A stretch of 64,000 bases of DNA, taken from positions 34,596,001-34,660,000 of the forward strand of contig NC_088859.1 in assembly GCF_963853765.1 (NCBI RefSeq), in the 5' to 3' direction. The notes under the pieces were generated by a model. That model saw only the letters and a program-made list of their open reading frames with translations, was not told the origin of the DNA and searched no databases. This DNA comes from Magallana gigas (lineage: Eukaryota). Below are positions 11,248-37,979 of the stretch, piece after piece. Both the position numbers and the translations under genes were made by a program. Numbering within the stretch: the first letter of the stretch is position 1; every line of letters starts with the position of its first letter.

Positions 11248-14236
11248 ATGCGGGGCCCCGCCGGCCTATGGCTGGTCGCGTGGCTGACCGCCGCTGTTCT
11301 GTCCTCCGCCCTAGGCCAGACTTGTCAGAGGTCGACGCTTCCTTGGCGAATAGCCGACGGAACCGACCCTGTGAAAATGGCGCGAGGAAACGTGACGGTG
11401 GTGGCGCTGCTGTTGGCCAGCTGACCTATGTGTCAGCAGCAGGCAGAAGGGTAAATAAAACCCAACGCTAAAGATCATTGTATGACATAGCATTGCATTA
11501 CCTCAAATTGTAGCAATACTATAGGCTCCTCCAAACACAGTTTCATATTTCCTTTTCTAAAGCATGTACAATTATCAGATGCAGTTATCAAAAGTTTTCC
11601 TAGACTTCTGTTTAAATGCTTGTCAATGATTATGGTAAAAAAGTGACCTGCAAAACCTTTTTTTATCTTCTTCAGAGAGCTAAGTATGATATTCTGATTA
11701 AAGTTAATCTTGAATCTTAAACACATTTTAGAAATCTGTTACCTTTATAGAAACATTTCTTTAATTTATAAAAAAACAATTATAATGACCTTTAATTACA
11801 CTTGCCAAAAAATAAAATTAAAAAAAATGAAAAAATATGAAGGGAATAAATTTTAATGTTGTTGGACTTTTACCTATATTTATTAAAATTCTTGTATTCA
11901 AGTTCAGAGTTTCATAAAACACCACAGAATTAAGTAGAGCAGTTCTATATGTTTAGAATTAAGTAGGCCCTGTGAAATACAGATTCATTAGCATATCTAT
12001 TATGTGCGTCTTTTGTCGGTCACAAACCCCGTCCCTGTTTTAATTTGATACAGATGTCACTTTCCTGACATACATATATACAATGTATTTAAATAGCCGT
12101 TCACATAAATATATCATGCAAATTTCTTTTTTGCAGAAAATAGGTTTACCGATTAGATTAATTTTTGACACGTACACCTGCACATAGCAGTAATATTTTA
12201 CTTTTTTAAATTCATATTCTAAACGACAATAACGTTTTCTTTTCATTCATTTTTGTATTACCAACATACTGAAATACTGATACAGGTAATTATATTTTTT
12301 GCAGTTTGGAAAGATTGAAGACATCATATCAACAGATAGGTAAAAGAGACATCACATTCTTAATTGTCAACCATGTCGCAGGAAAGGACTCAATTAACGA
12401 ACTGACTAGGCGAGTGTCATTTCCGGTCTACCAAGATGACCATACTTTGTCGATACAACAAAAACTCAACGCTAGCATAGACGACCTATTCCTTTATGAC
12501 AGGTACAAAGTAATACAAGCTGTGTATTAACGACAATCTTGTTCAAATTGATGCGGATTGGGGTCGTAAATATTTGATACGTATTCATAATTTGTATATA
12601 AATCAAGTGCAAAGTTTGGCCATTTGGTTTATGACTGATTACTGTACAAAAAAAAAAAAATAGTGCAATATAAAACCCCATGGCCAACTAAAATGTATAA
12701 TTAATTTATATTGTTAATAACTCAATCAATGGCATCTCTTTTTTTTCTTTTTTTTAAAGATGCAGTACACTCGTGTATCACTTAAAAAAACCTGAAAGTC
12801 TAGTGTCCCAGGGGACCATGCAAAGCAACTTGCTGACCACCTACTTAAACAACCCTTGCAATTGCACTAACAACTCTAACTCAAATGTAGCGACTGAGCC
12901 GACACCAAAAGAGCAACTAACAGGATCTGGCAGTTCACATACTTCCATCACTCGCAGAAAAAGACATATTGTAAACAACTTTGGTTCATCGTTGGTATCG
13001 ATGAACAGCGTTGTTTCTCATAACGGTCGTGTTCCAAAGTGAACTACTCATAGATGAGTTGCCATGCGTCGAAATCGAGCGCTGCGATACCTTTTGGTGC
13101 GAAGACTATGAAAATTTATTAAGAAGTATCGGTCAAATTATGAACCTCAACACTCATGTGTCTGTCCCAATCCATCGCCTGCTCTGAAACAAGAGTGCAC
13201 CTGATACGGTTATGGAATCTCAAATTCAGTCAGTTTCTGATCATGTCAAGAGCGCAGTAACACTGTTTATAGCGAATGTATTTGCAATAATTGTCCTGCG
13301 TTTCGGAGACGGCATCGTCAGCAGTTCGTAGATGATGACACCAACTGTGAACTTCTGACGAGCTGACACTGTAACCAGGAAAATGGTTTGTCGGCAACAG
13401 AATGCTCGTGACAACATCAGCTCGCGGCGTTAGAGCAACATCCGAGCTGACATTGTCACCTACAAGCAGACGATTCCTTGCAAGACTGTCAGTGACAAGG
13501 GTCTCGAGGATCCTGATCCTGACAGGAAGTTGGTACCAACATCCAGTGACAGTGACCGTCCGAAGGCGCTTCCTGTCTCTGAGAGAGTGGGTCATCAACT
13601 TGACAATGACAACAAATGCCAGTAAGAGACATTTCCTGACAGTGACAAGTAAATCCCGGGGAAACGAACTCGCAGACCTGACAATGACACCATGATGATG
13701 GCGACTGTCTTTGACAGTGTCAACAGTCTATCAACAATGTTGTCACGTGACAGTGACCCATGGGAAATACGGTTGATGCATATGTCAGCTGCTCTAATCC
13801 CAGTGCGTTGACTGGCCACTGACAATGACCGCTGGAAACAAGCAGTACGCGTAACTGACAGTGACTGAGTGACCAGTCAGGTGTTAACTCCTGATCCTGA
13901 CAAAACAGCATAGGGTCTTGACAATGACACACTGTGGACGACACTAATCTTTCTTGACAGTGCCAAGACTCAACACAGACTACCGAGACCTGATACTGTC
14001 AGACACCTGTAGACTCCACCAATGATTCTGTCTGACAGTGTCGTGCAATCAACGGGTCTTGACAGTGACAGACTCAGACCTCAGGAGGCATTGTTTGACA
14101 GGAAAAAGCCGGTCGCTCCTGAAATTGACATCCTATGTGACACTGACAAGTCAGTACCTGATACTGTCGAACAGGGACATATGACGACCGCGCCCACTGT
14201 CTTTGACAACCACAGACCTGACAGTGACAATATTAG
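11248..14236 (+). CDS. SELENOP: Selenoprotein P, copy 1 (46 Sec, 625 aa); exons 11248-11450, 12305-12502, 12760-14236
   Basis: Signal peptide MRGPAGLWLVAWLTAAVLSSALG; VVALLLAS-U-PMC (UxxC, TGA 11422-11424), cf. vertebrate VVALLQASUYLC. GT-AG phase-2/phase-2 introns join in frame to ...LNASIDDLFLYDR|CSTLVYHL (cf. human LNGSKDDFLIYDRCGRLVYHL). From 13040 the frame has 45 further TGA and no TAA/TAG until TAG 14234-14236. Total 1878 nt. Two SECIS in the 3' UTR. Confidence 0.97.
13040..14236 (+). CDS. SELENOP: Sec-rich C-terminal domain of SELENOP copy 1 (UGA2-UGA46)
   Basis: In-frame TGA at 13040,13055,13109,13202,13238,13364,13409,13448,13493,13514,13520,13547,13553,13580,13601,13607,13637,13643,13679,13685,13712,13748,13754,13820,13826,13856,13862,13892,13898,13919,13925,13955,13991,14033,14060,14066,14096,14120,14126,14138,14144,14159,14204,14219,14225; mostly in U-x-U, U-x-C or C-x-U motifs. 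Confidence 0.95.
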
Positions 14237-14441: not shown

Positions 14442-14512
14442 CGTCCTCTGTCAATGACGATTTCCAGATAAAACCCAACAGGTCTCCGGGGGTCTGATCC
14501 AATCAGAGAACG
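14442..14512 (+). promoter_or_regulatory. SECIS1 (form-2-like) of SELENOP copy 1
   Basis: AUGA 14454-14457 and UGAU 14495-14498; helix II GAUUUCC/GGGGGUC plus AGA/UCU; unpaired AAAA 14470-14473; mini-stem CC/GG; helix I CUCUG/CAGAG. Confidence 0.9.
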
Positions 14513-14819: not shown

Positions 14820-14918
14820 AATGTAGACCCTGCTATATCCGGCCATGAAATGTCACCCTGAAACTTTAAAAAGAGGGGTGGTTTTGAATAATTTGGATCA
14901 ATAGGCAGCATCTACATT
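14820..14918 (+). promoter_or_regulatory. SECIS2 (form-2-like) of SELENOP copy 1
   Basis: AUGA 14845-14848 and UGAA 14885-14888; helix GUCACCCU/GGGGUGGU; AAA 14861-14863; mini-stem CUU/AAG; basal AAUGUAGA/UCUACAUU. AATAAA follows at 14994-14999. Confidence 0.92.
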
Positions 14919-34342: not shown

Positions 34343-36749
34343 ATGCGGAGCCCCGCCGGCCTTTGGCTGGTCGCGTGGCTGACCGCCGCTGTTCTGTCCT
34401 CCGCCCTCGGCCAGACTTGTCAGAGGTCGACGCTTCCTTGGCGAACAGCCGACGGAACCGACCCTGTGAAAATGGCGCGAGGAAACGTGACGGTGGTGGC
34501 GCTGCTGTTGGCCAGCTGACCTATGTGTCAGCAGCAGGCAGAAGGGTAAGAACCTAAACCGAATTTAAAAAATATCAATTTCGAAGATTTTCTTTGCCCC
34601 TTCCTAGAAAATGCATTATTTTAAGATACTACACTTACCTTATGCTTAAATATACCCCCGTCTGAAATATTATTTATATAATGTGATTTCTTTCGTTTGA
34701 AGAACGAATAAGACATGGTAATTGTAATGAATGTATTCCGGAAATATAAAGTTTTCAAATCGAATACCTTTATTGATATGTTTAGTCACGCGGTTCAATA
34801 GAATCGGTTTCTTTAGGGCGACACGTAGAGATTCAGTTTGATGAGTCCAACTTATAACTTCATTTTGATATTTAATAGTGTATGTATCAGTAAATACATT
34901 AAGGCTGTTGCGTGTCGTTGCTAGTCCATTGAATGTGTTGTTGTTTTATTGCTGATTCGTATTAGAAATGAATGGGTTTTAAATGAGAATTAGTGTGTAA
35001 GCGTAATAATTAGAAATACAATTAATAAAAACAGATTACATCATGCCTTACTTGAGTCGCAATCTTCACACTCCTATTTAGCTTGTTACGCTGTCATTTT
35101 CTTGACAGTTATGTTGTACATTTATCAAATATTATGCAATTCTCGAATGCAAAATTTTAAGCTATCAACTTAATTTAATTCCAAGCCTTAAAAGTCCTTC
35201 AGTAATAAAGGATAACGCCAATTTCAGAAAAGGAAACGATTTTCATGAATCAACACTATATTCATTCTCTCAAATCAAAAAACTTACTATTTACTTTCAT
35301 TCTTTTCACAGTTTGGAAAAATTGATGACATCGTATCAAAATATAGGTAAAAGGGACATCTCATTTTTCATTGTTAACCATGCCAGAGGAGAAGCTTCTG
35401 TTAACGAACTGACTAGGCGAGTGTCATTTCCGGTCTACCAAGATGACAACACTTCGATGATACAACAGACACTCAACGCTAGCATAGACGACCTATTCCT
35501 TTATGACAGGTACAAAGTAAAGCCAATACTTTGGATAGATTTCAAAGTGAAAATCATTTCCCTGGTCGTAATAATTGAACGAAAAACAAAAAACCCAACA
35601 AACAAGAGAAAAAATGTCAATGTGACAGCAAACCTGGTTTTTCTTTTGTGTGAACAGTATCCATAATCTATTTGTCAATCCTGAATTGATAAACACTTCC
35701 TCTCCTAAGGAATGGGGGTACTATGTATGCAATATTTTGCGAAAAAAAATAACTTAGATAAACAGCTGGTATTTTTTTTTCATAAGTAATCAAAAATCAA
35801 AATCCAAGTAATATGCACATCTCTGCTCTATTTACTACTGATCTGCGTTTGGAGTATCCTTCCGACAGCCACCCGCCATTTTCTCCACTTCAATAACCGG
35901 GTTTTCCTTTTTGGAAAAAAAACGATTAAAAAGGGGCCAACATAGAAAGCCTTTTAAAAAGGCATTTGCTTACTAGAGCTAACGAGTTTTCAAATGTTAA
36001 AATTTATCAACATTTTAGTAATTATTTTTTTTTTCTTTTTTAGATGCGGCACACTTGTATATCACTTGAGAAAACCTGAAAGTCTCGTGTCTCATGGAAC
36101 CATGCAATCCAACTTGCTGACCACCTACTTAAACAACCCTTGCAAATGTACTGATAAGTTTAAATCAAAGGTTTCAACCAAGCCAACTCTATATCAACTC
36201 CAAAGACAGGCGGGCAGTTCGCTATCTTCCATTATTCGTCGACGCAGGCATGTATTAAACCACTTCGGTACATCGTTGGTGTCAACAAACAATGTTCCTT
36301 CTCGCAACGATCGTCCTTCAGATTGACCGAACAACAGATGACGCAGGCAAGTGTCTAACATAGTTGGTACACAAAATCGCGTTCCTTCAGACAATGCTCC
36401 TCAAGAATGACCGAATAGCAGATGACGCAGGCATGTGTCTAAAATAGTTGGTACACAGAATCGCGTTCCTTCAGACAATGTTCCTCAAGAATGACCGAAT
36501 AGCAGATGACGCAGGCATGTGCCTAAAATAGTTGGTACACAAAATCGCGTTCCTTCAGACAATGCTCCTCAAGAATGACCGAATAGCAGATGACGCAGGC
36601 ATGTGTCTAAAATATTTGGTACACGGAATAGCGTTCCTTCAGACAATGTTCCTCCTGTAGAATGACAGAATAGCAGATGACGCAGGCATGTGTCACGTAT
36701 ATTTGGTTCATCGTTGATATTCATGAACAACGGTCGCGTTGCAAACTAA
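34343..36749 (+). CDS. SELENOP: Selenoprotein P, copy 2 (11 Sec, 368 aa); exons 34343-34545, 35312-35509, 36044-36749
   Basis: Same exon sizes (203, 198 nt) and phases as copy 1; UPMC with TGA 34517-34519; ten more in-frame TGA (36324,36339,36408,36423,36492,36507,36576,36591,36663,36678); ends at TAA 36747-36749; total 1107 nt; both SECIS intact. Confidence 0.92.
36324..36700 (+). repeat. Coding tandem repeat, 84-bp unit (last 87 bp), ~5 units; unit U-PNSR-U-RRHVSKIVGTQNRVPSDN(A/V)PQE
   Basis: First TGA of each unit at 36324, 36408, 36492, 36576, 36663; units nearly identical and frame-preserving. Confidence 0.95.
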
Positions 36750-37253
36750 ACGGCCTGCGGATGCATTGCCCTACGTCAAATTGAGTAATATTCTGACCAT
36801 GTCAAAAGCGCTTTTTTGTCTCTTAGAGAGTGGTTCACTGCCTTAAAAAAATGAAGCAATTACCAGTACCAGTACGAGACATTTTAAGACAGTTACAAGT
36901 AAATCCCCTGGAAACGAACTCGCAGACCTGACAGTGATATTAGGATTATGGTGACTGCAATGGCAGCAGTTCATCAACACGTTACAGTGACCCCATTCAT
37001 TGATTCATATTTCAGCTCCTGTTATCCAATTGCGTTGACTGGCCACTGACAATATGACCTATTCAAACAGACAGAACGCGTAACTGACAGTGATAGGGCG
37101 ATCATGTGTTAATCCCGATAAACAGCGTAGAATCTTTCAATGTCAAAAGGTCTTGACAGTGGCAGACCCAGTCCTCGTGATGCTCTGTGTGACAGGAAAG
37201 AGCCAGTCACGCCTTTAAGTACTGTCTTTGACAACCGACAGTGGCAATATTAG
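36750..37253 (+). pseudogene. Decayed remnant of the ancestral Sec-rich domain in the 3' UTR of SELENOP copy 2
   Basis: Collinear blocks match copy 1 13043-14236, e.g. GTAAATCCC..GGAAACGAACTCGCAGACCTGACA, GCGTTGACTGGCCACTGACAAT, CGCGTAACTGACAGTGA, ACTGTCTTTGACAACC and the old stop CAATATTAG (37251-37253). About 500 nt versus ~1190 nt, with deletions and TGA changed to AGA/TTA/TGG/CGA. Confidence 0.88.
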
Positions 37254-37460: not shown

Positions 37461-37531
37461 CGTCCTCTGTCAATGACGATTTCCAGATAAAACCCAACAG
37501 GTCTCCGGGGGTCTGATCCAATCAGAGGACG
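37461..37531 (+). promoter_or_regulatory. SECIS1 of SELENOP copy 2
   Basis: AUGA 37473-37476 and UGAU 37514-37517; almost identical to copy 1; helix I CGUCCUCUG/CAGAGGACG fully paired. Confidence 0.9.
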
Positions 37532-37888
37532 GCGGGATATGTGAAATCTTCCTGATGACATTGAATTTCGAGATACTTTATACAATACATTTTATATACT
37601 TCACCCCAGTGCCATTTTCCTGAGGCCTGTTAGAAAGTAGTTTAAAGCTTTGTTAAACTATACTCTGAACTAATTTCTGAAACCTCTGTAAAATTTTGTT
37701 TTAAGTTATCAATTAAAAAAAATCAAAAAGAAATTTAAACTACCTTTCACCTCATTTTAATTTCTGTTAATAACTCCTCTTTATTTGTTTTAAGTAGAAT
37801 CTATCTCCTGTCATCATATTCTCAGTGTAAAAGTTGTAATAGTTTTATGCTTGAATGTTTTTATCAATGAGAAAAAATCATATCTATT

Positions 37889-37979
37889 CGGATCCTGCTG
37901 TATCTGACCATGAAATTTCACCCTGAAACTTTAAAAAGAGGGGTGATTTTGAACAATTAAGATAAATAAGCAGTATCCA
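37889..37979 (+). promoter_or_regulatory. SECIS2 of SELENOP copy 2
   Basis: AUGA 37910-37913 and UGAA 37950-37953; UCACCCU/GGGGUGA helix; AAA motif; CUU/AAG mini-stem; AATAAA at 38062-38067. Confidence 0.9.

What the first reader, a model, noticed from the sequence alone, without database searches (positions are those of the whole stretch)
36237..36690. Each copy 2 repeat ends in R-U-R-R, a furin consensus with Sec at the X position: possible precursor of Sec peptides
Seen: AGA TGA CGC AGG (R-U-R-R) occurs five times, and R-R-R-R at 36237-36248 precedes the array. Known: furin/PCSK enzymes cut after R-X-K/R-R in secreted proteins, and this protein has a signal peptide. Inference: processing would release the Trx domain and ~28-aa peptides with two Sec each, as in a neuropeptide or antimicrobial-peptide precursor. 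The site forms only if UGA is decoded, which would couple cleavage to selenium supply.
Basis: inference. Interest (0 to 1): 0.72.

Follow-up and report, generated by a model that had tools for sequence, protein, structure and literature searches.

The report
Furin-type sites in oyster selenoprotein P
An oyster's second selenoprotein P gene has a tail of five repeated units, each with two selenocysteines and each ending in Arg-Sec-Arg-Arg; the motif is real and copies a conserved protease-type site, but whether anything is cut there is untested.

Summary
AGATGACGCAGG (R-U-R-R) occurs five times at the stated places (0.06 expected by chance), and R-R-R-R lies at 36237-36248.

The gene is an expressed, spliced oyster SELENOP paralog. 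It encodes 368 aa with 11 Sec, a signal peptide, a UxxC motif and two SECIS candidates. Its sister copy in the same window has 46 Sec.

The motif recurs because of tandem duplication, not independent selection. The repeat boundary lies inside the R-R-R-R|H-V site. Each junction therefore joins the R-U at the end of a di-Sec unit to the R-R-H-V of that site.

New here: the parent tetrabasic site is conserved.
- It reads RRKR, RRRR or RKRR in oysters and RRRRRR, RPRR or RARR in more distant bivalves.
- It sits at one alignment column in 8 of 9 bivalve SELENOPs.
- It lies in a linker modelled with very low confidence (pLDDT below 30), between the Trx-like domain and the Sec tail.

A furin-type cut there is plausible, and it would parallel the kallikrein cut of mammalian SELENOP.

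Points against a neuropeptide- or AMP-like precursor:
- the unit bodies evolve almost neutrally;
- unit number varies between alleles;
- a sister species has R-U-P-R at one junction;
- the proposed coupling to selenium supply adds nothing, because failed decoding simply ends the chain.

Cleavage is an inference (about 45%), and released functional peptides are unlikely (about 10-15%). The scan had already noted both paralogs on this window.

The parts
34343..34545 (+). Copy 2 SELENOP, first coding exon: start codon, signal peptide and the UxxC motif (LLAS-U-PMC).
   Evidence: Translation. The splice joint 34544>35311 (GT..AG, cut +1) is seen in 66 and 77 polyA RNA reads.
35312..35509 (+). Copy 2, second coding exon (middle of the SelP_N domain).
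   Evidence: The joint 35507>36042 (GT..AG, cut +2) is seen in RNA reads. Fragment P0010 matches Pfam SelP_N at E = 6e-20.
36044..36749 (+). Copy 2, last coding exon: end of the N domain, the linker, the di-Sec array and the TAA stop at 36747-36749.
   Evidence: Stranded polyA RNA covers it at depth of about 5-45.
36237..36248 (+). Linker tetrabasic site R-R-R-R, followed by H-V. This is the parent of the R-U-R-R junctions.
   Evidence: It is homologous to RRKR at 12953-12964 in copy 1 and to RKRR or RRRR in orthologs. The codons change but all four residues stay basic. It falls in one alignment column in 8 of 9 bivalve SELENOPs.
36249..36347 (+). Unit U0 (33 aa, two Sec, ends R-U-R-R). It is the oldest duplicated unit and the closest to the copy 1 module.
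   Evidence: It is shared with the sister-species contig L004, where it ends R-U-P-R.
36348..36599 (+). Units U1-U3 (28 aa each, two Sec each, each ending R-U-R-R). These are a recent expansion.
   Evidence: They are not found in the sister-species contigs, which have two units.
36600..36686 (+). Unit U4 (29 aa, two Sec, ends R-U-R-R). It is orthologous to the second unit of the sister species.
36687..36746 (+). Terminal 20-aa piece without Sec (HVSRIFGSSLIFMNNGRVAN). This is the original in-place module, whose first UGA is now TAA.
   Evidence: The alignment to copy 1 is. The sequence behind the stop still aligns to copy 1's TTHR-U-VAMRRNR.
36750..37253 (+). Decayed remnant of the ancestral long Sec tail, now 3' UTR.
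   Evidence: The self-comparison with copy 1 is. The frames are broken by TAA and TAG. The remnant is transcribed.
37465..37527 (+). SECIS candidate 1 of copy 2.
   Evidence: Rfam SECIS_1, 29.3 bits, E = 0.0035, below the gathering score. The aligned sequence is identical to the copy 1 element at 14446-14508.
37901..37964 (+). SECIS candidate 2 of copy 2.
   Evidence: Rfam SECIS_1, 26.1 bits, E = 0.027. It is the counterpart of 14836-14899 in copy 1.
12953..13057 (+). Copy 1 (46-Sec SELENOP): RRKR site plus the single ancestral di-Sec module HIVNNFGSSLVSMNSVVSHNGRVPK-U-TTHR-U. It is followed by VAMRRNR, not RR.

Best explanation
The stretch is the C-terminal tail of a second, expressed selenoprotein P gene of an oyster (Magallana/Crassostrea gigas or a very close relative).

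All bivalve SELENOPs examined carry a tetrabasic R-x-K/R-R site in the linker between the Trx-like N domain and the Sec-rich tail; that linker was modelled with very low confidence, which suggests disorder. The site is followed by a conserved module of about 30 aa that ends U-x-x-x-R-U.

In this paralog the first UGA of the original module became UAA, and the long tail behind it decayed. The module had already been duplicated in tandem. The duplicated segment starts inside the tetrabasic site (c|GA CGC AGG CAT) and ends inside the second Sec codon (AGA T|GA). Every junction therefore reads R-U-R-R-H-V: a full furin-type consensus with Sec at P3, inherited from the parent site.

Most likely mechanism (inferred, not shown): furin-type convertases of the secretory pathway cut at the linker site. 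This would separate a roughly 20-kDa N domain from the tail, much as plasma kallikrein does in mammals. They would probably also cut, at least partly, at the junctions. The products would be di-Sec fragments of about 3.2-3.9 kDa that carry selenium rather than act as signalling peptides.
For: Identity of the gene:
- A signal peptide, a UxxC motif, SelP_N, ten in-frame UGAs in the tail and two SECIS candidates.
- NCBI's 167-aa fragment XP_011427856.1, 'selenoprotein P-like [Crassostrea gigas]', belongs to the same 90%-identity cluster as the copy 2 fragment.

Expression:
- Stranded polyA RNA covers the array, and both introns are spliced as modelled.

Origin of the motif:
- Homology between the units and the upstream sequence begins at 36241, inside R-R-R-R.
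- An allele read 'goes back 99' with 10 shared letters at exactly this junction.
- Copy 1 has R-U followed by VAM at the homologous place.

Conservation of the parent site:
- Four different codon sets all encode four basic residues with Arg at P1 and P4.
- R-x-[KR]-R lies in the same alignment column in 8 of 9 bivalve SELENOPs and almost nowhere else in these roughly 600-aa proteins. One of them reads R-S-R-A-R-R|S, which has no polybasic run and no His.

Accessibility and enzyme:
- An AF2 model of the copy-1-type protein gives pLDDT 60-80 for the N domain and below 30, with no secondary structure, for residues 166-229 around the site.
- The genome has nine exon-level matches to the convertase P domain.

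Constraint on the junction:
- 0 of 12 junction columns vary, against 44 of 87 elsewhere in the unit (p = 5e-4). With the sister species added, 1 of 12 against 51 of 87.
Against: - No data here show any cleavage.
- The five sites are copies of one event, and unequal crossing-over at the junction would itself keep them identical.
- The base after UGA is C in 10 of 10 tail UGAs here and in 34 of 45 in copy 1. Part of the constraint on CGC after UGA may therefore be a decoding context, not a protease site.
- The sister species has R-U-P-R at one of its two junctions, in six contigs. Pro at P2 is poor for furin.
- In distant bivalves the basic run is followed by a His-rich stretch (RRRRRRHNHERHSHR), which looks like the heparin-binding His/basic linker of vertebrate SELENOP.
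- The two Sec of a unit (U-x-x-x-x-U) probably form a diselenide ring spanning P8-P3, which may hinder binding to the enzyme (inference).
- The low pLDDT comes from a nine-sequence alignment, so it is weak evidence of disorder.
Confidence: 0.45

Rival explanations
1. The basic junctions are binding patches, not cleavage sites. The tetrabasic and His-containing linker would be the bivalve counterpart of the heparin-binding or receptor-binding His/basic region of vertebrate SELENOP. Repeating R-U-R-R-H-V-S-K five times would then multiply the binding sites, and the protein would stay intact.
For: In the more distant bivalve SELENOPs the Arg run is followed directly by HNHERH(S)H(R). His follows the basic run in 7 of the 8 full-length sequences that carry the site and in every copy-2-type sequence; a convertase site does not need this. 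Vertebrate SELENOP binds heparin through His-rich and basic stretches (general knowledge).
Against: One ortholog has R-S-R-A-R-R|S, with neither a polybasic run nor His, yet it still fits the convertase consensus. In oysters Lys appears only at P2 or P3, never at P1 or P4 (only two cases). An exposed R-R-K-R in a secreted protein is usually cut wherever it is accessible (general knowledge). The two readings do not exclude each other.
Confidence: 0.25
2. The R-U-R-R motif is a neutral by-product. It is only the scar of the duplication junction, kept by concerted evolution and by the need for UGA followed by C. The tail is simply a selenium load of variable length, and any cutting is incidental or absent.
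For: Units are 92% alike. pN/pS of the units is 0.56-0.97, and the divergence of the units (10-19%) resembles that of the dead 3' UTR (18%). Unit number differs between alleles and contigs, from two to five or more. R-U-P-R and S-U-R-R variants exist. The +4 C bias is strong.
Against: The junction is significantly less variable than the rest of the unit, even between old units and across species. The parent site is under clear purifying selection. A by-product that fits the consensus would still be cut if it is exposed.
Confidence: 0.2
3. The array is not translated. The first tail UGA (36321-36323) acts as a stop, so copy 2 makes a single-Sec protein like vertebrate SELENOP2, and the R-U-R-R sites never exist as protein.
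For: No ribosome or protein data were available here. The SECIS matches fall below Rfam's gathering score. One transcript contig carries a TAG inside the array (L001).
Against: Both SECIS candidates are retained, and the first is identical to that of the 46-Sec copy. All ten tail UGAs are in frame and followed by C, and no TAA or TAG interrupts 141 codons, while the other two frames are full of stops. The four UGAs and the open frame are kept in the sister species. Behind the TAA, decay set in quickly.
Confidence: 0.1

Closest known systems
Limited proteolysis of mammalian SELENOP by plasma kallikrein (as stated in PMC8230778 and PMC12138407)
   Same: [quoted passage not shown]
   Different: The enzyme there is extracellular plasma kallikrein, acting at single Arg residues in a His-rich stretch. 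Here the site is a tetrabasic furin-type consensus that would be met inside the secretory pathway. It is repeated at every unit of the tail, and cleavage has not been shown.
Oyster 46-Sec SELENOP and the multi-Sec SELENOPs of molluscs (Baclaocos et al. 2019, J Mol Biol 431:4381; cited from reference lists and PMC8230778, full text not held)
   Same: The same family and the same gene architecture: signal peptide, UxxC, UGA-rich tail and two SECIS. Copy 1 of this window is that gene, and copy 2 is its tandem paralog.
   Different: Copy 2 lost the UQU-rich tail through a UGA-to-UAA change. It rebuilt a short tail from one di-Sec module. R-U-[KR]-R occurs in none of the copy-1-type tails examined.
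Multi-copy peptide precursors cut at R-X-K/R-R or dibasic sites (FMRFamide-type neuropeptide precursors, multipeptide antimicrobial precursors; general knowledge)
   Same: A signal peptide followed by tandem units of about 28 aa, each ending in a convertase consensus.
   Different: In those precursors the peptide body is conserved, the spacers drift, and Gly often precedes the basic pair. Here the body drifts, the junction is conserved, there is no Gly, and the unit number is polymorphic.
Furin substrates in general (R-X-K/R-R, Arg at P1 and P4, no aliphatic residue at P1'; Nakayama's rules, from memory)
   Same: The site reads P4 R, P2 R, P1 R, P1' H or Q, P2' V, with polar flanks.
   Different: Sec at P3 is unprecedented to my knowledge, and it probably sits in a diselenide ring with P8.

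Membership tests
Selenoprotein P (SELENOP) | N-terminal SelP_N (thioredoxin-like) domain with a UxxC motif | tested here: met
   LLAS-U-PMC lies in the exon at 34343-34545. Pfam SelP_N matches the copy 2 fragment P0010 at E = 6e-20, and matches the last-exon piece weakly.
Selenoprotein P (SELENOP) | Signal peptide | tested here: inconclusive
   A hydrophobic N-terminus, MRSPAGLWLVAWLTAAVLSSALG, precedes QTC. I judged it by eye; no predictor is available among the tools.
Selenoprotein P (SELENOP) | Several in-frame UGAs in a C-terminal tail, with no other stop codons | tested here: met
   Ten UGAs lie in 141 codons, and the first non-UGA stop is the TAA at 36747.
Selenoprotein P (SELENOP) | Two SECIS elements in the 3' UTR | tested here: inconclusive
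   Two SECIS_1 matches (29.3 and 26.1 bits) fall below the gathering score of 35. Both are conserved in position and sequence between the two copies.
Substrate of furin-type proprotein convertases | R-X-K/R-R consensus with Arg at P1 and P4 | tested here: met
   R-R-R-R at 36237 and five R-U-R-R sites.
Substrate of furin-type proprotein convertases | The site is conserved in orthologs | tested here: met
   The linker site is present in 8 of 9 bivalve SELENOPs and in all copy-2-type sequences. The junction sites are only partly conserved: the sister species has R-U-P-R plus R-U-R-R.
Substrate of furin-type proprotein convertases | The site is exposed or disordered | tested here: inconclusive
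   The AF2 model of the copy-1-type P0012 has pLDDT below 30 and no secondary structure around residues 199-202. The alignment is shallow, and the copy 2 tail itself was not modelled because Sec cannot be represented.
Substrate of furin-type proprotein convertases | A convertase is present in the organism | tested here: met
   Nine matches to the P_proprotein domain PF01483 lie over the cut-off in the own genome.
Substrate of furin-type proprotein convertases | Cleavage is observed | not testable with these tools
   This needs protein work.
Multi-copy bioactive peptide precursor (neuropeptide or AMP type) | Repeated peptides flanked by convertase sites behind a signal peptide | tested here: met
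Multi-copy bioactive peptide precursor (neuropeptide or AMP type) | The mature peptide sequence is under purifying selection and is more conserved than its flanks | tested here: not met
   pN/pS of the units is 0.56-0.97. The variable columns lie in the peptide body and the invariant ones at the junction.
Multi-copy bioactive peptide precursor (neuropeptide or AMP type) | Typical maturation signals (Gly before the basic residues for amidation) | tested here: not met
   The units end ...N-S-R-U-R-R, with no Gly.

The most novel reading that the evidence does not exclude
Oyster SELENOP-2 is a true polyprotein. Convertases would cut at the conserved linker site and at every R-U-R-R junction, and carboxypeptidase would trim the Arg pair. 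The haemolymph would then receive 26- to 31-residue peptides that end in a six-residue diselenide ring (U-x-x-x-R-U, the ring size of oxytocin). These would act as small, diffusible selenium carriers or redox peptides. The same linker site would split enzyme domain and transport tail in all bivalve SELENOPs.
Probability: 0.12. Interest if true: 0.8.

Novelty: new variant of a known kind. Interest (0 to 1): 0.5.

Why it matters
SELENOP is the only protein family that decodes many UGAs as Sec in one chain. How its two halves are separated and used is known only for mammals, where plasma kallikrein makes the cut. A conserved furin-type site at the same domain boundary in bivalves would point to an old, convergent need to split the protein. 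It also gives a simple, testable handle: mutate or inhibit one site. The repeat array is a natural experiment as well. It shows how a Sec tail is rebuilt after loss, by unequal crossing-over at a 10-base homology, with unit number still varying in the population. If the junctions are cut, this would be the first case of Sec inside a convertase site and of small genetically encoded di-Sec peptides.

Tried and rejected
- **Rfam at gathering score:** it found no SECIS. Only the E-value mode showed the two candidates per gene.
- **RNA structure in the array** (a Sec-redefinition-type hairpin as the reason for the conserved junction): rejected. The array folds no better than shuffles, z = +1.47.
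- **Other copies of the array in the genome:** none.
- **Literature:** three full-text searches pairing SELENOP with furin or convertase terms found only receptor (ApoER2) or PCSK9 contexts. The key paper on mollusc SELENOP (PMC6885538) and my guessed PMC id for the kallikrein paper (PMC1133894, from memory) are not held. I therefore cannot say whether copy 2 or its basic sites were described there.
- **Protein search with the 92-aa exon piece:** the word-index search gave only two hits. The exhaustive search and two follow-up searches gave the ortholog panel.
- **P0017:** its DNA could not be found.
- **ProP/PiTou scoring:** not available.
- **Selenium-coupled cleavage:** considered and rejected as uninformative, because failure to decode a UGA ends the chain at that codon.
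Full report
**1. The observation**

The 12-mer AGATGACGCAGG occurs five times in the 64-kb window. All copies are on the + strand, at 36336, 36420, 36504, 36588 and 36675. Shuffled sequence gives 0.06 expected matches. In the frame of the surrounding exon each copy reads R-U-R-R if UGA is Sec, and CGT CGA CGC AGG (R-R-R-R) lies at 36237-36248. Tandem Repeats Finder calls an 84-bp unit, 4.4 copies and 92% matches at 36320-36694. The description is therefore correct. The five sites are recent copies of one another, so their number says nothing about selection.

**2. What the gene is**

The window holds two tandem paralogs on the + strand, at about 10.7-14.9 kb and 33.9-38 kb.

Copy 2:
- Its coding exons are 34343-34545, 35312-35509 and 36044-36749. 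It encodes 368 aa with 11 Sec, about 39 kDa without the signal peptide.
- It has a hydrophobic signal sequence, the LLAS-U-PMC (UxxC) motif and the YDR|CGTLVYHL motif across a splice site. Its fragments match Pfam SelP_N.
- It has two SECIS_1 candidates at 37465-37527 and 37901-37964. These fall below Rfam's gathering score, but both have counterparts in copy 1, and the first is identical in aligned sequence.

Copy 1:
- Its last exon stays open from 12761 to a TAG at about 14232, interrupted only by 45 UGAs. With the UxxC Sec this makes 46.
- This matches the 46-Sec oyster SELENOP cited in PMC8230778.

Organism and expression:
- One run that holds the stretch is labelled 'oyster metagenome'.
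- NCBI's XP_011427856.1, 'selenoprotein P-like [Crassostrea gigas]', is a 167-aa fragment that clusters at 90% identity or more with the copy 2 fragment.
- Stranded polyA RNA-seq covers the copy 2 array at depth of about 7-45. It confirms both introns with GT..AG joints and runs on through the 3' UTR. The gene is therefore expressed.
- Counts of exon-junction reads suggest a level within about five-fold of copy 1. Reads of the two copies cross-map in the first coding exon, so this is rough.

**3. Anatomy of the tail**

Behind R-R-R-R come these pieces:
- U0: HVLNHFGTSLVSTNNVPSRNDRPSD-U-PNNR-U-RR, 33 aa.
- Three units of 28 aa, of the form [HQ]V[SP][NK]IVGTQNRVPSDN[AV]PQE-U-PNSR-U-RR.
- U4: 29 aa.
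- A 20-aa end without Sec, HVSRIFGSSLIFMNNGRVAN, followed by TAA.

Copy 1 has a single such module behind its RRKR: HIVNNFGSSLVSMNSVVSHNGRVPK-U-TTHR-U. It continues VAMRRNR and then runs into the long UQU-rich tail.

The 20-aa end of copy 2 aligns with the start of that module, and the TAA aligns with the module's first UGA. The bases behind the TAA still align with TTHR-U-VAMRRNR, and further on with the old tail, which is now broken by TAA and TAG. This agrees with two earlier notes of the scan on this window.

**4. Where R-U-R-R comes from**

Similarity between the units and the sequence upstream of U0 starts at 36241, inside the tetrabasic codons: cgt c|GA CGC AGG CAT GT. Each unit ends AGA T|GA. 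The duplicated segment therefore runs from the second half of R-R-R-R to the second Sec codon. Each junction joins R-U, already present in copy 1 as THR-U, to R-R-H-V.

One allele in the RNA reads repeats U0 with the same joint: 'goes back 99', with 10 letters shared by both sides. Another allele skips 183 bases inside the array. That skip is also seen in the transcript contig L001.

Contigs from other samples show two units (L005, L001). De Bruijn assembly may collapse repeats, so only the read-supported alleles are safe evidence. They show that unit number is polymorphic.

**5. The parent site is conserved**

This is the main new result.

At the DNA level the linker site takes four forms, each encoding four basic residues with Arg at P1 and P4:

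| Source | Codons | Residues |
|---|---|---|
| Copy 1 | cgc aga aaa aga | RRKR |
| Copy 2 | cgt cga cgc agg | RRRR |
| L002, copy-1-like | cgc aaa aga aga | RKRR |
| L004, copy-2-like | cgc cga cgc aga | RRRR |

A panel of full-length bivalve SELENOPs was recovered from ORF calls that print UGA as W. I checked that W stands for TGA in L004, L005 and L010. In this panel R-x-[KR]-R falls in the same alignment column in 8 of 9 sequences, just behind the CxC that ends the N domain. It occurs almost nowhere else in these roughly 600-residue proteins. The forms are RRKR, RRRR (twice), RRRRRR, LRRRR, RPRR, RARR and NRRRR. The ninth sequence has only a His-rich stretch there.

The AF2 model of the copy-1-type protein gives pLDDT 60-80 for the N domain. 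Around the site it gives pLDDT below 30 with no secondary structure (residues 166-229). This is weak support for an exposed linker.

The genome has nine exon-level matches to the convertase P domain.

By the usual rules for furin (Arg at P1 and P4, basic P2, no aliphatic P1'; from memory), both R-R-R-R|H-V and R-U-R-R|H-V qualify.

**6. Is the junction motif itself constrained?**

- Within the window's five units, 0 of 12 junction columns vary, against 44 of 87 elsewhere (p = 5e-4).
- With the two units of the sister species added, the figures are 1 of 12 against 51 of 87 (p = 0.001).
- The single change is CGC to CCC, giving R-U-P-R. It is present in all six contigs of that species.

Three causes other than a protease site could keep the junction constant:
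- homogenisation by unequal crossing-over at exactly this homology;
- the need to keep UGA;
- a strong preference for C after UGA, seen in 10 of 10 UGAs here, 34 of 45 in copy 1 and 34 of 48 in a distant bivalve.

An RNA hairpin is not the cause (z = +1.47).

**7. What argues against a peptide precursor in the neuropeptide or AMP sense**

- Between the window and the sister species, pN/pS is 0.97 for U0, 0.56 for the last unit and 0.43 for the end piece.
- The nucleotide divergence of these pieces (10-19%) is like that of the dead 3' UTR (18%) (counts are small).
- The body of the unit is the variable part and the junction is the constant part. This is the reverse of bioactive-peptide precursors.
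- There is no Gly before the basic pair.
- Unit number is not fixed.

If fragments are released, they are better seen as selenium cargo.

**8. The rival reading of the basic site**

In the more distant bivalves the Arg run is followed by HNHERH(S)H. This recalls the His/basic heparin-binding linker of vertebrate SELENOP. His follows the run in 7 of the 8 full-length sequences that carry the site. A binding patch is therefore a serious alternative, and it may coexist with cleavage. Against it as the only function: one ortholog has R-S-R-A-R-R|S, a plain convertase consensus with neither a basic run nor His.

**9. Comparison with what is known**

- The closest known process is the kallikrein cut of mammalian SELENOP in the same linker (PMC8230778, PMC12138407).
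- Full-text searches found no report of convertase processing of SELENOP.
- The paper on mollusc SELENOP could not be read, so prior description of copy 2 cannot be excluded.
- R-U-[KR]-R occurs in none of the copy-1-type tails.

**10. Verdict**

| Claim | My estimate |
|---|---|
| Motif and its origin as a duplication scar of a conserved tetrabasic linker site | about 0.85 |
| Array is translated | about 0.8-0.9 |
| Convertases cut at the linker and at least some junctions | about 0.45 (inference) |
| Released peptides have a function of their own | about 0.1-0.15 |

This is a new variant of a known kind of gene, with a testable but untested processing hypothesis.

Noticed in passing
window 479-549 (+): A mir-124 precursor match lies above Rfam's gathering score (57.3 bits). 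It sits about 10 kb upstream of SELENOP copy 1.
   Followed up: no
window 9445-9518 (-): A tRNA match (36.3 bits) lies just upstream of copy 1.
   Followed up: no
window 36278-36462 and 36241-36339: RNA reads of one pooled sample show two further array alleles. One is a 183-base in-frame deletion joining U0 to unit 2. The other is a 99-base tandem duplication of U0 with a 10-base shared junction. Unit number is therefore polymorphic.
   Followed up: partly
L001:1203-1230: A copy-2-like transcript contig from another run has S-U-R-R at its first junction and an in-frame TAG two codons later. Its middle exon looks like copy 1. It may be a truncated allele, a chimeric assembly or a gene-conversion product.
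   Followed up: no
window 35640-35900: Low-level reads of the opposite orientation (first mate on +) lie inside the second intron of copy 2. This may be an antisense or independent transcript.
   Followed up: no
window 37636-37699: Many RNA reads replace 62 bases of the copy 2 3' UTR, between the two SECIS candidates, with AAGGT. This is probably an indel allele rather than splicing, since the skipped stretch ends GT..TG.
   Followed up: no
window 12761-14232; L010: The base after an in-frame UGA is C in 34 of 45 UGAs in copy 1 and in 34 of 48 in a distant bivalve SELENOP, against about 25% C at first codon positions. This explains the dominance of U-Q, U-H, U-P and U-R in these tails.
   Followed up: partly
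L004:774-972: In the sister species the dead tail behind the shared TAA still reads UQUQENPGERNSQTUQUHHDDGD in frame. It is far less decayed than in the window. The truncation predates the species split, but decay is slow or uneven.
   Followed up: partly
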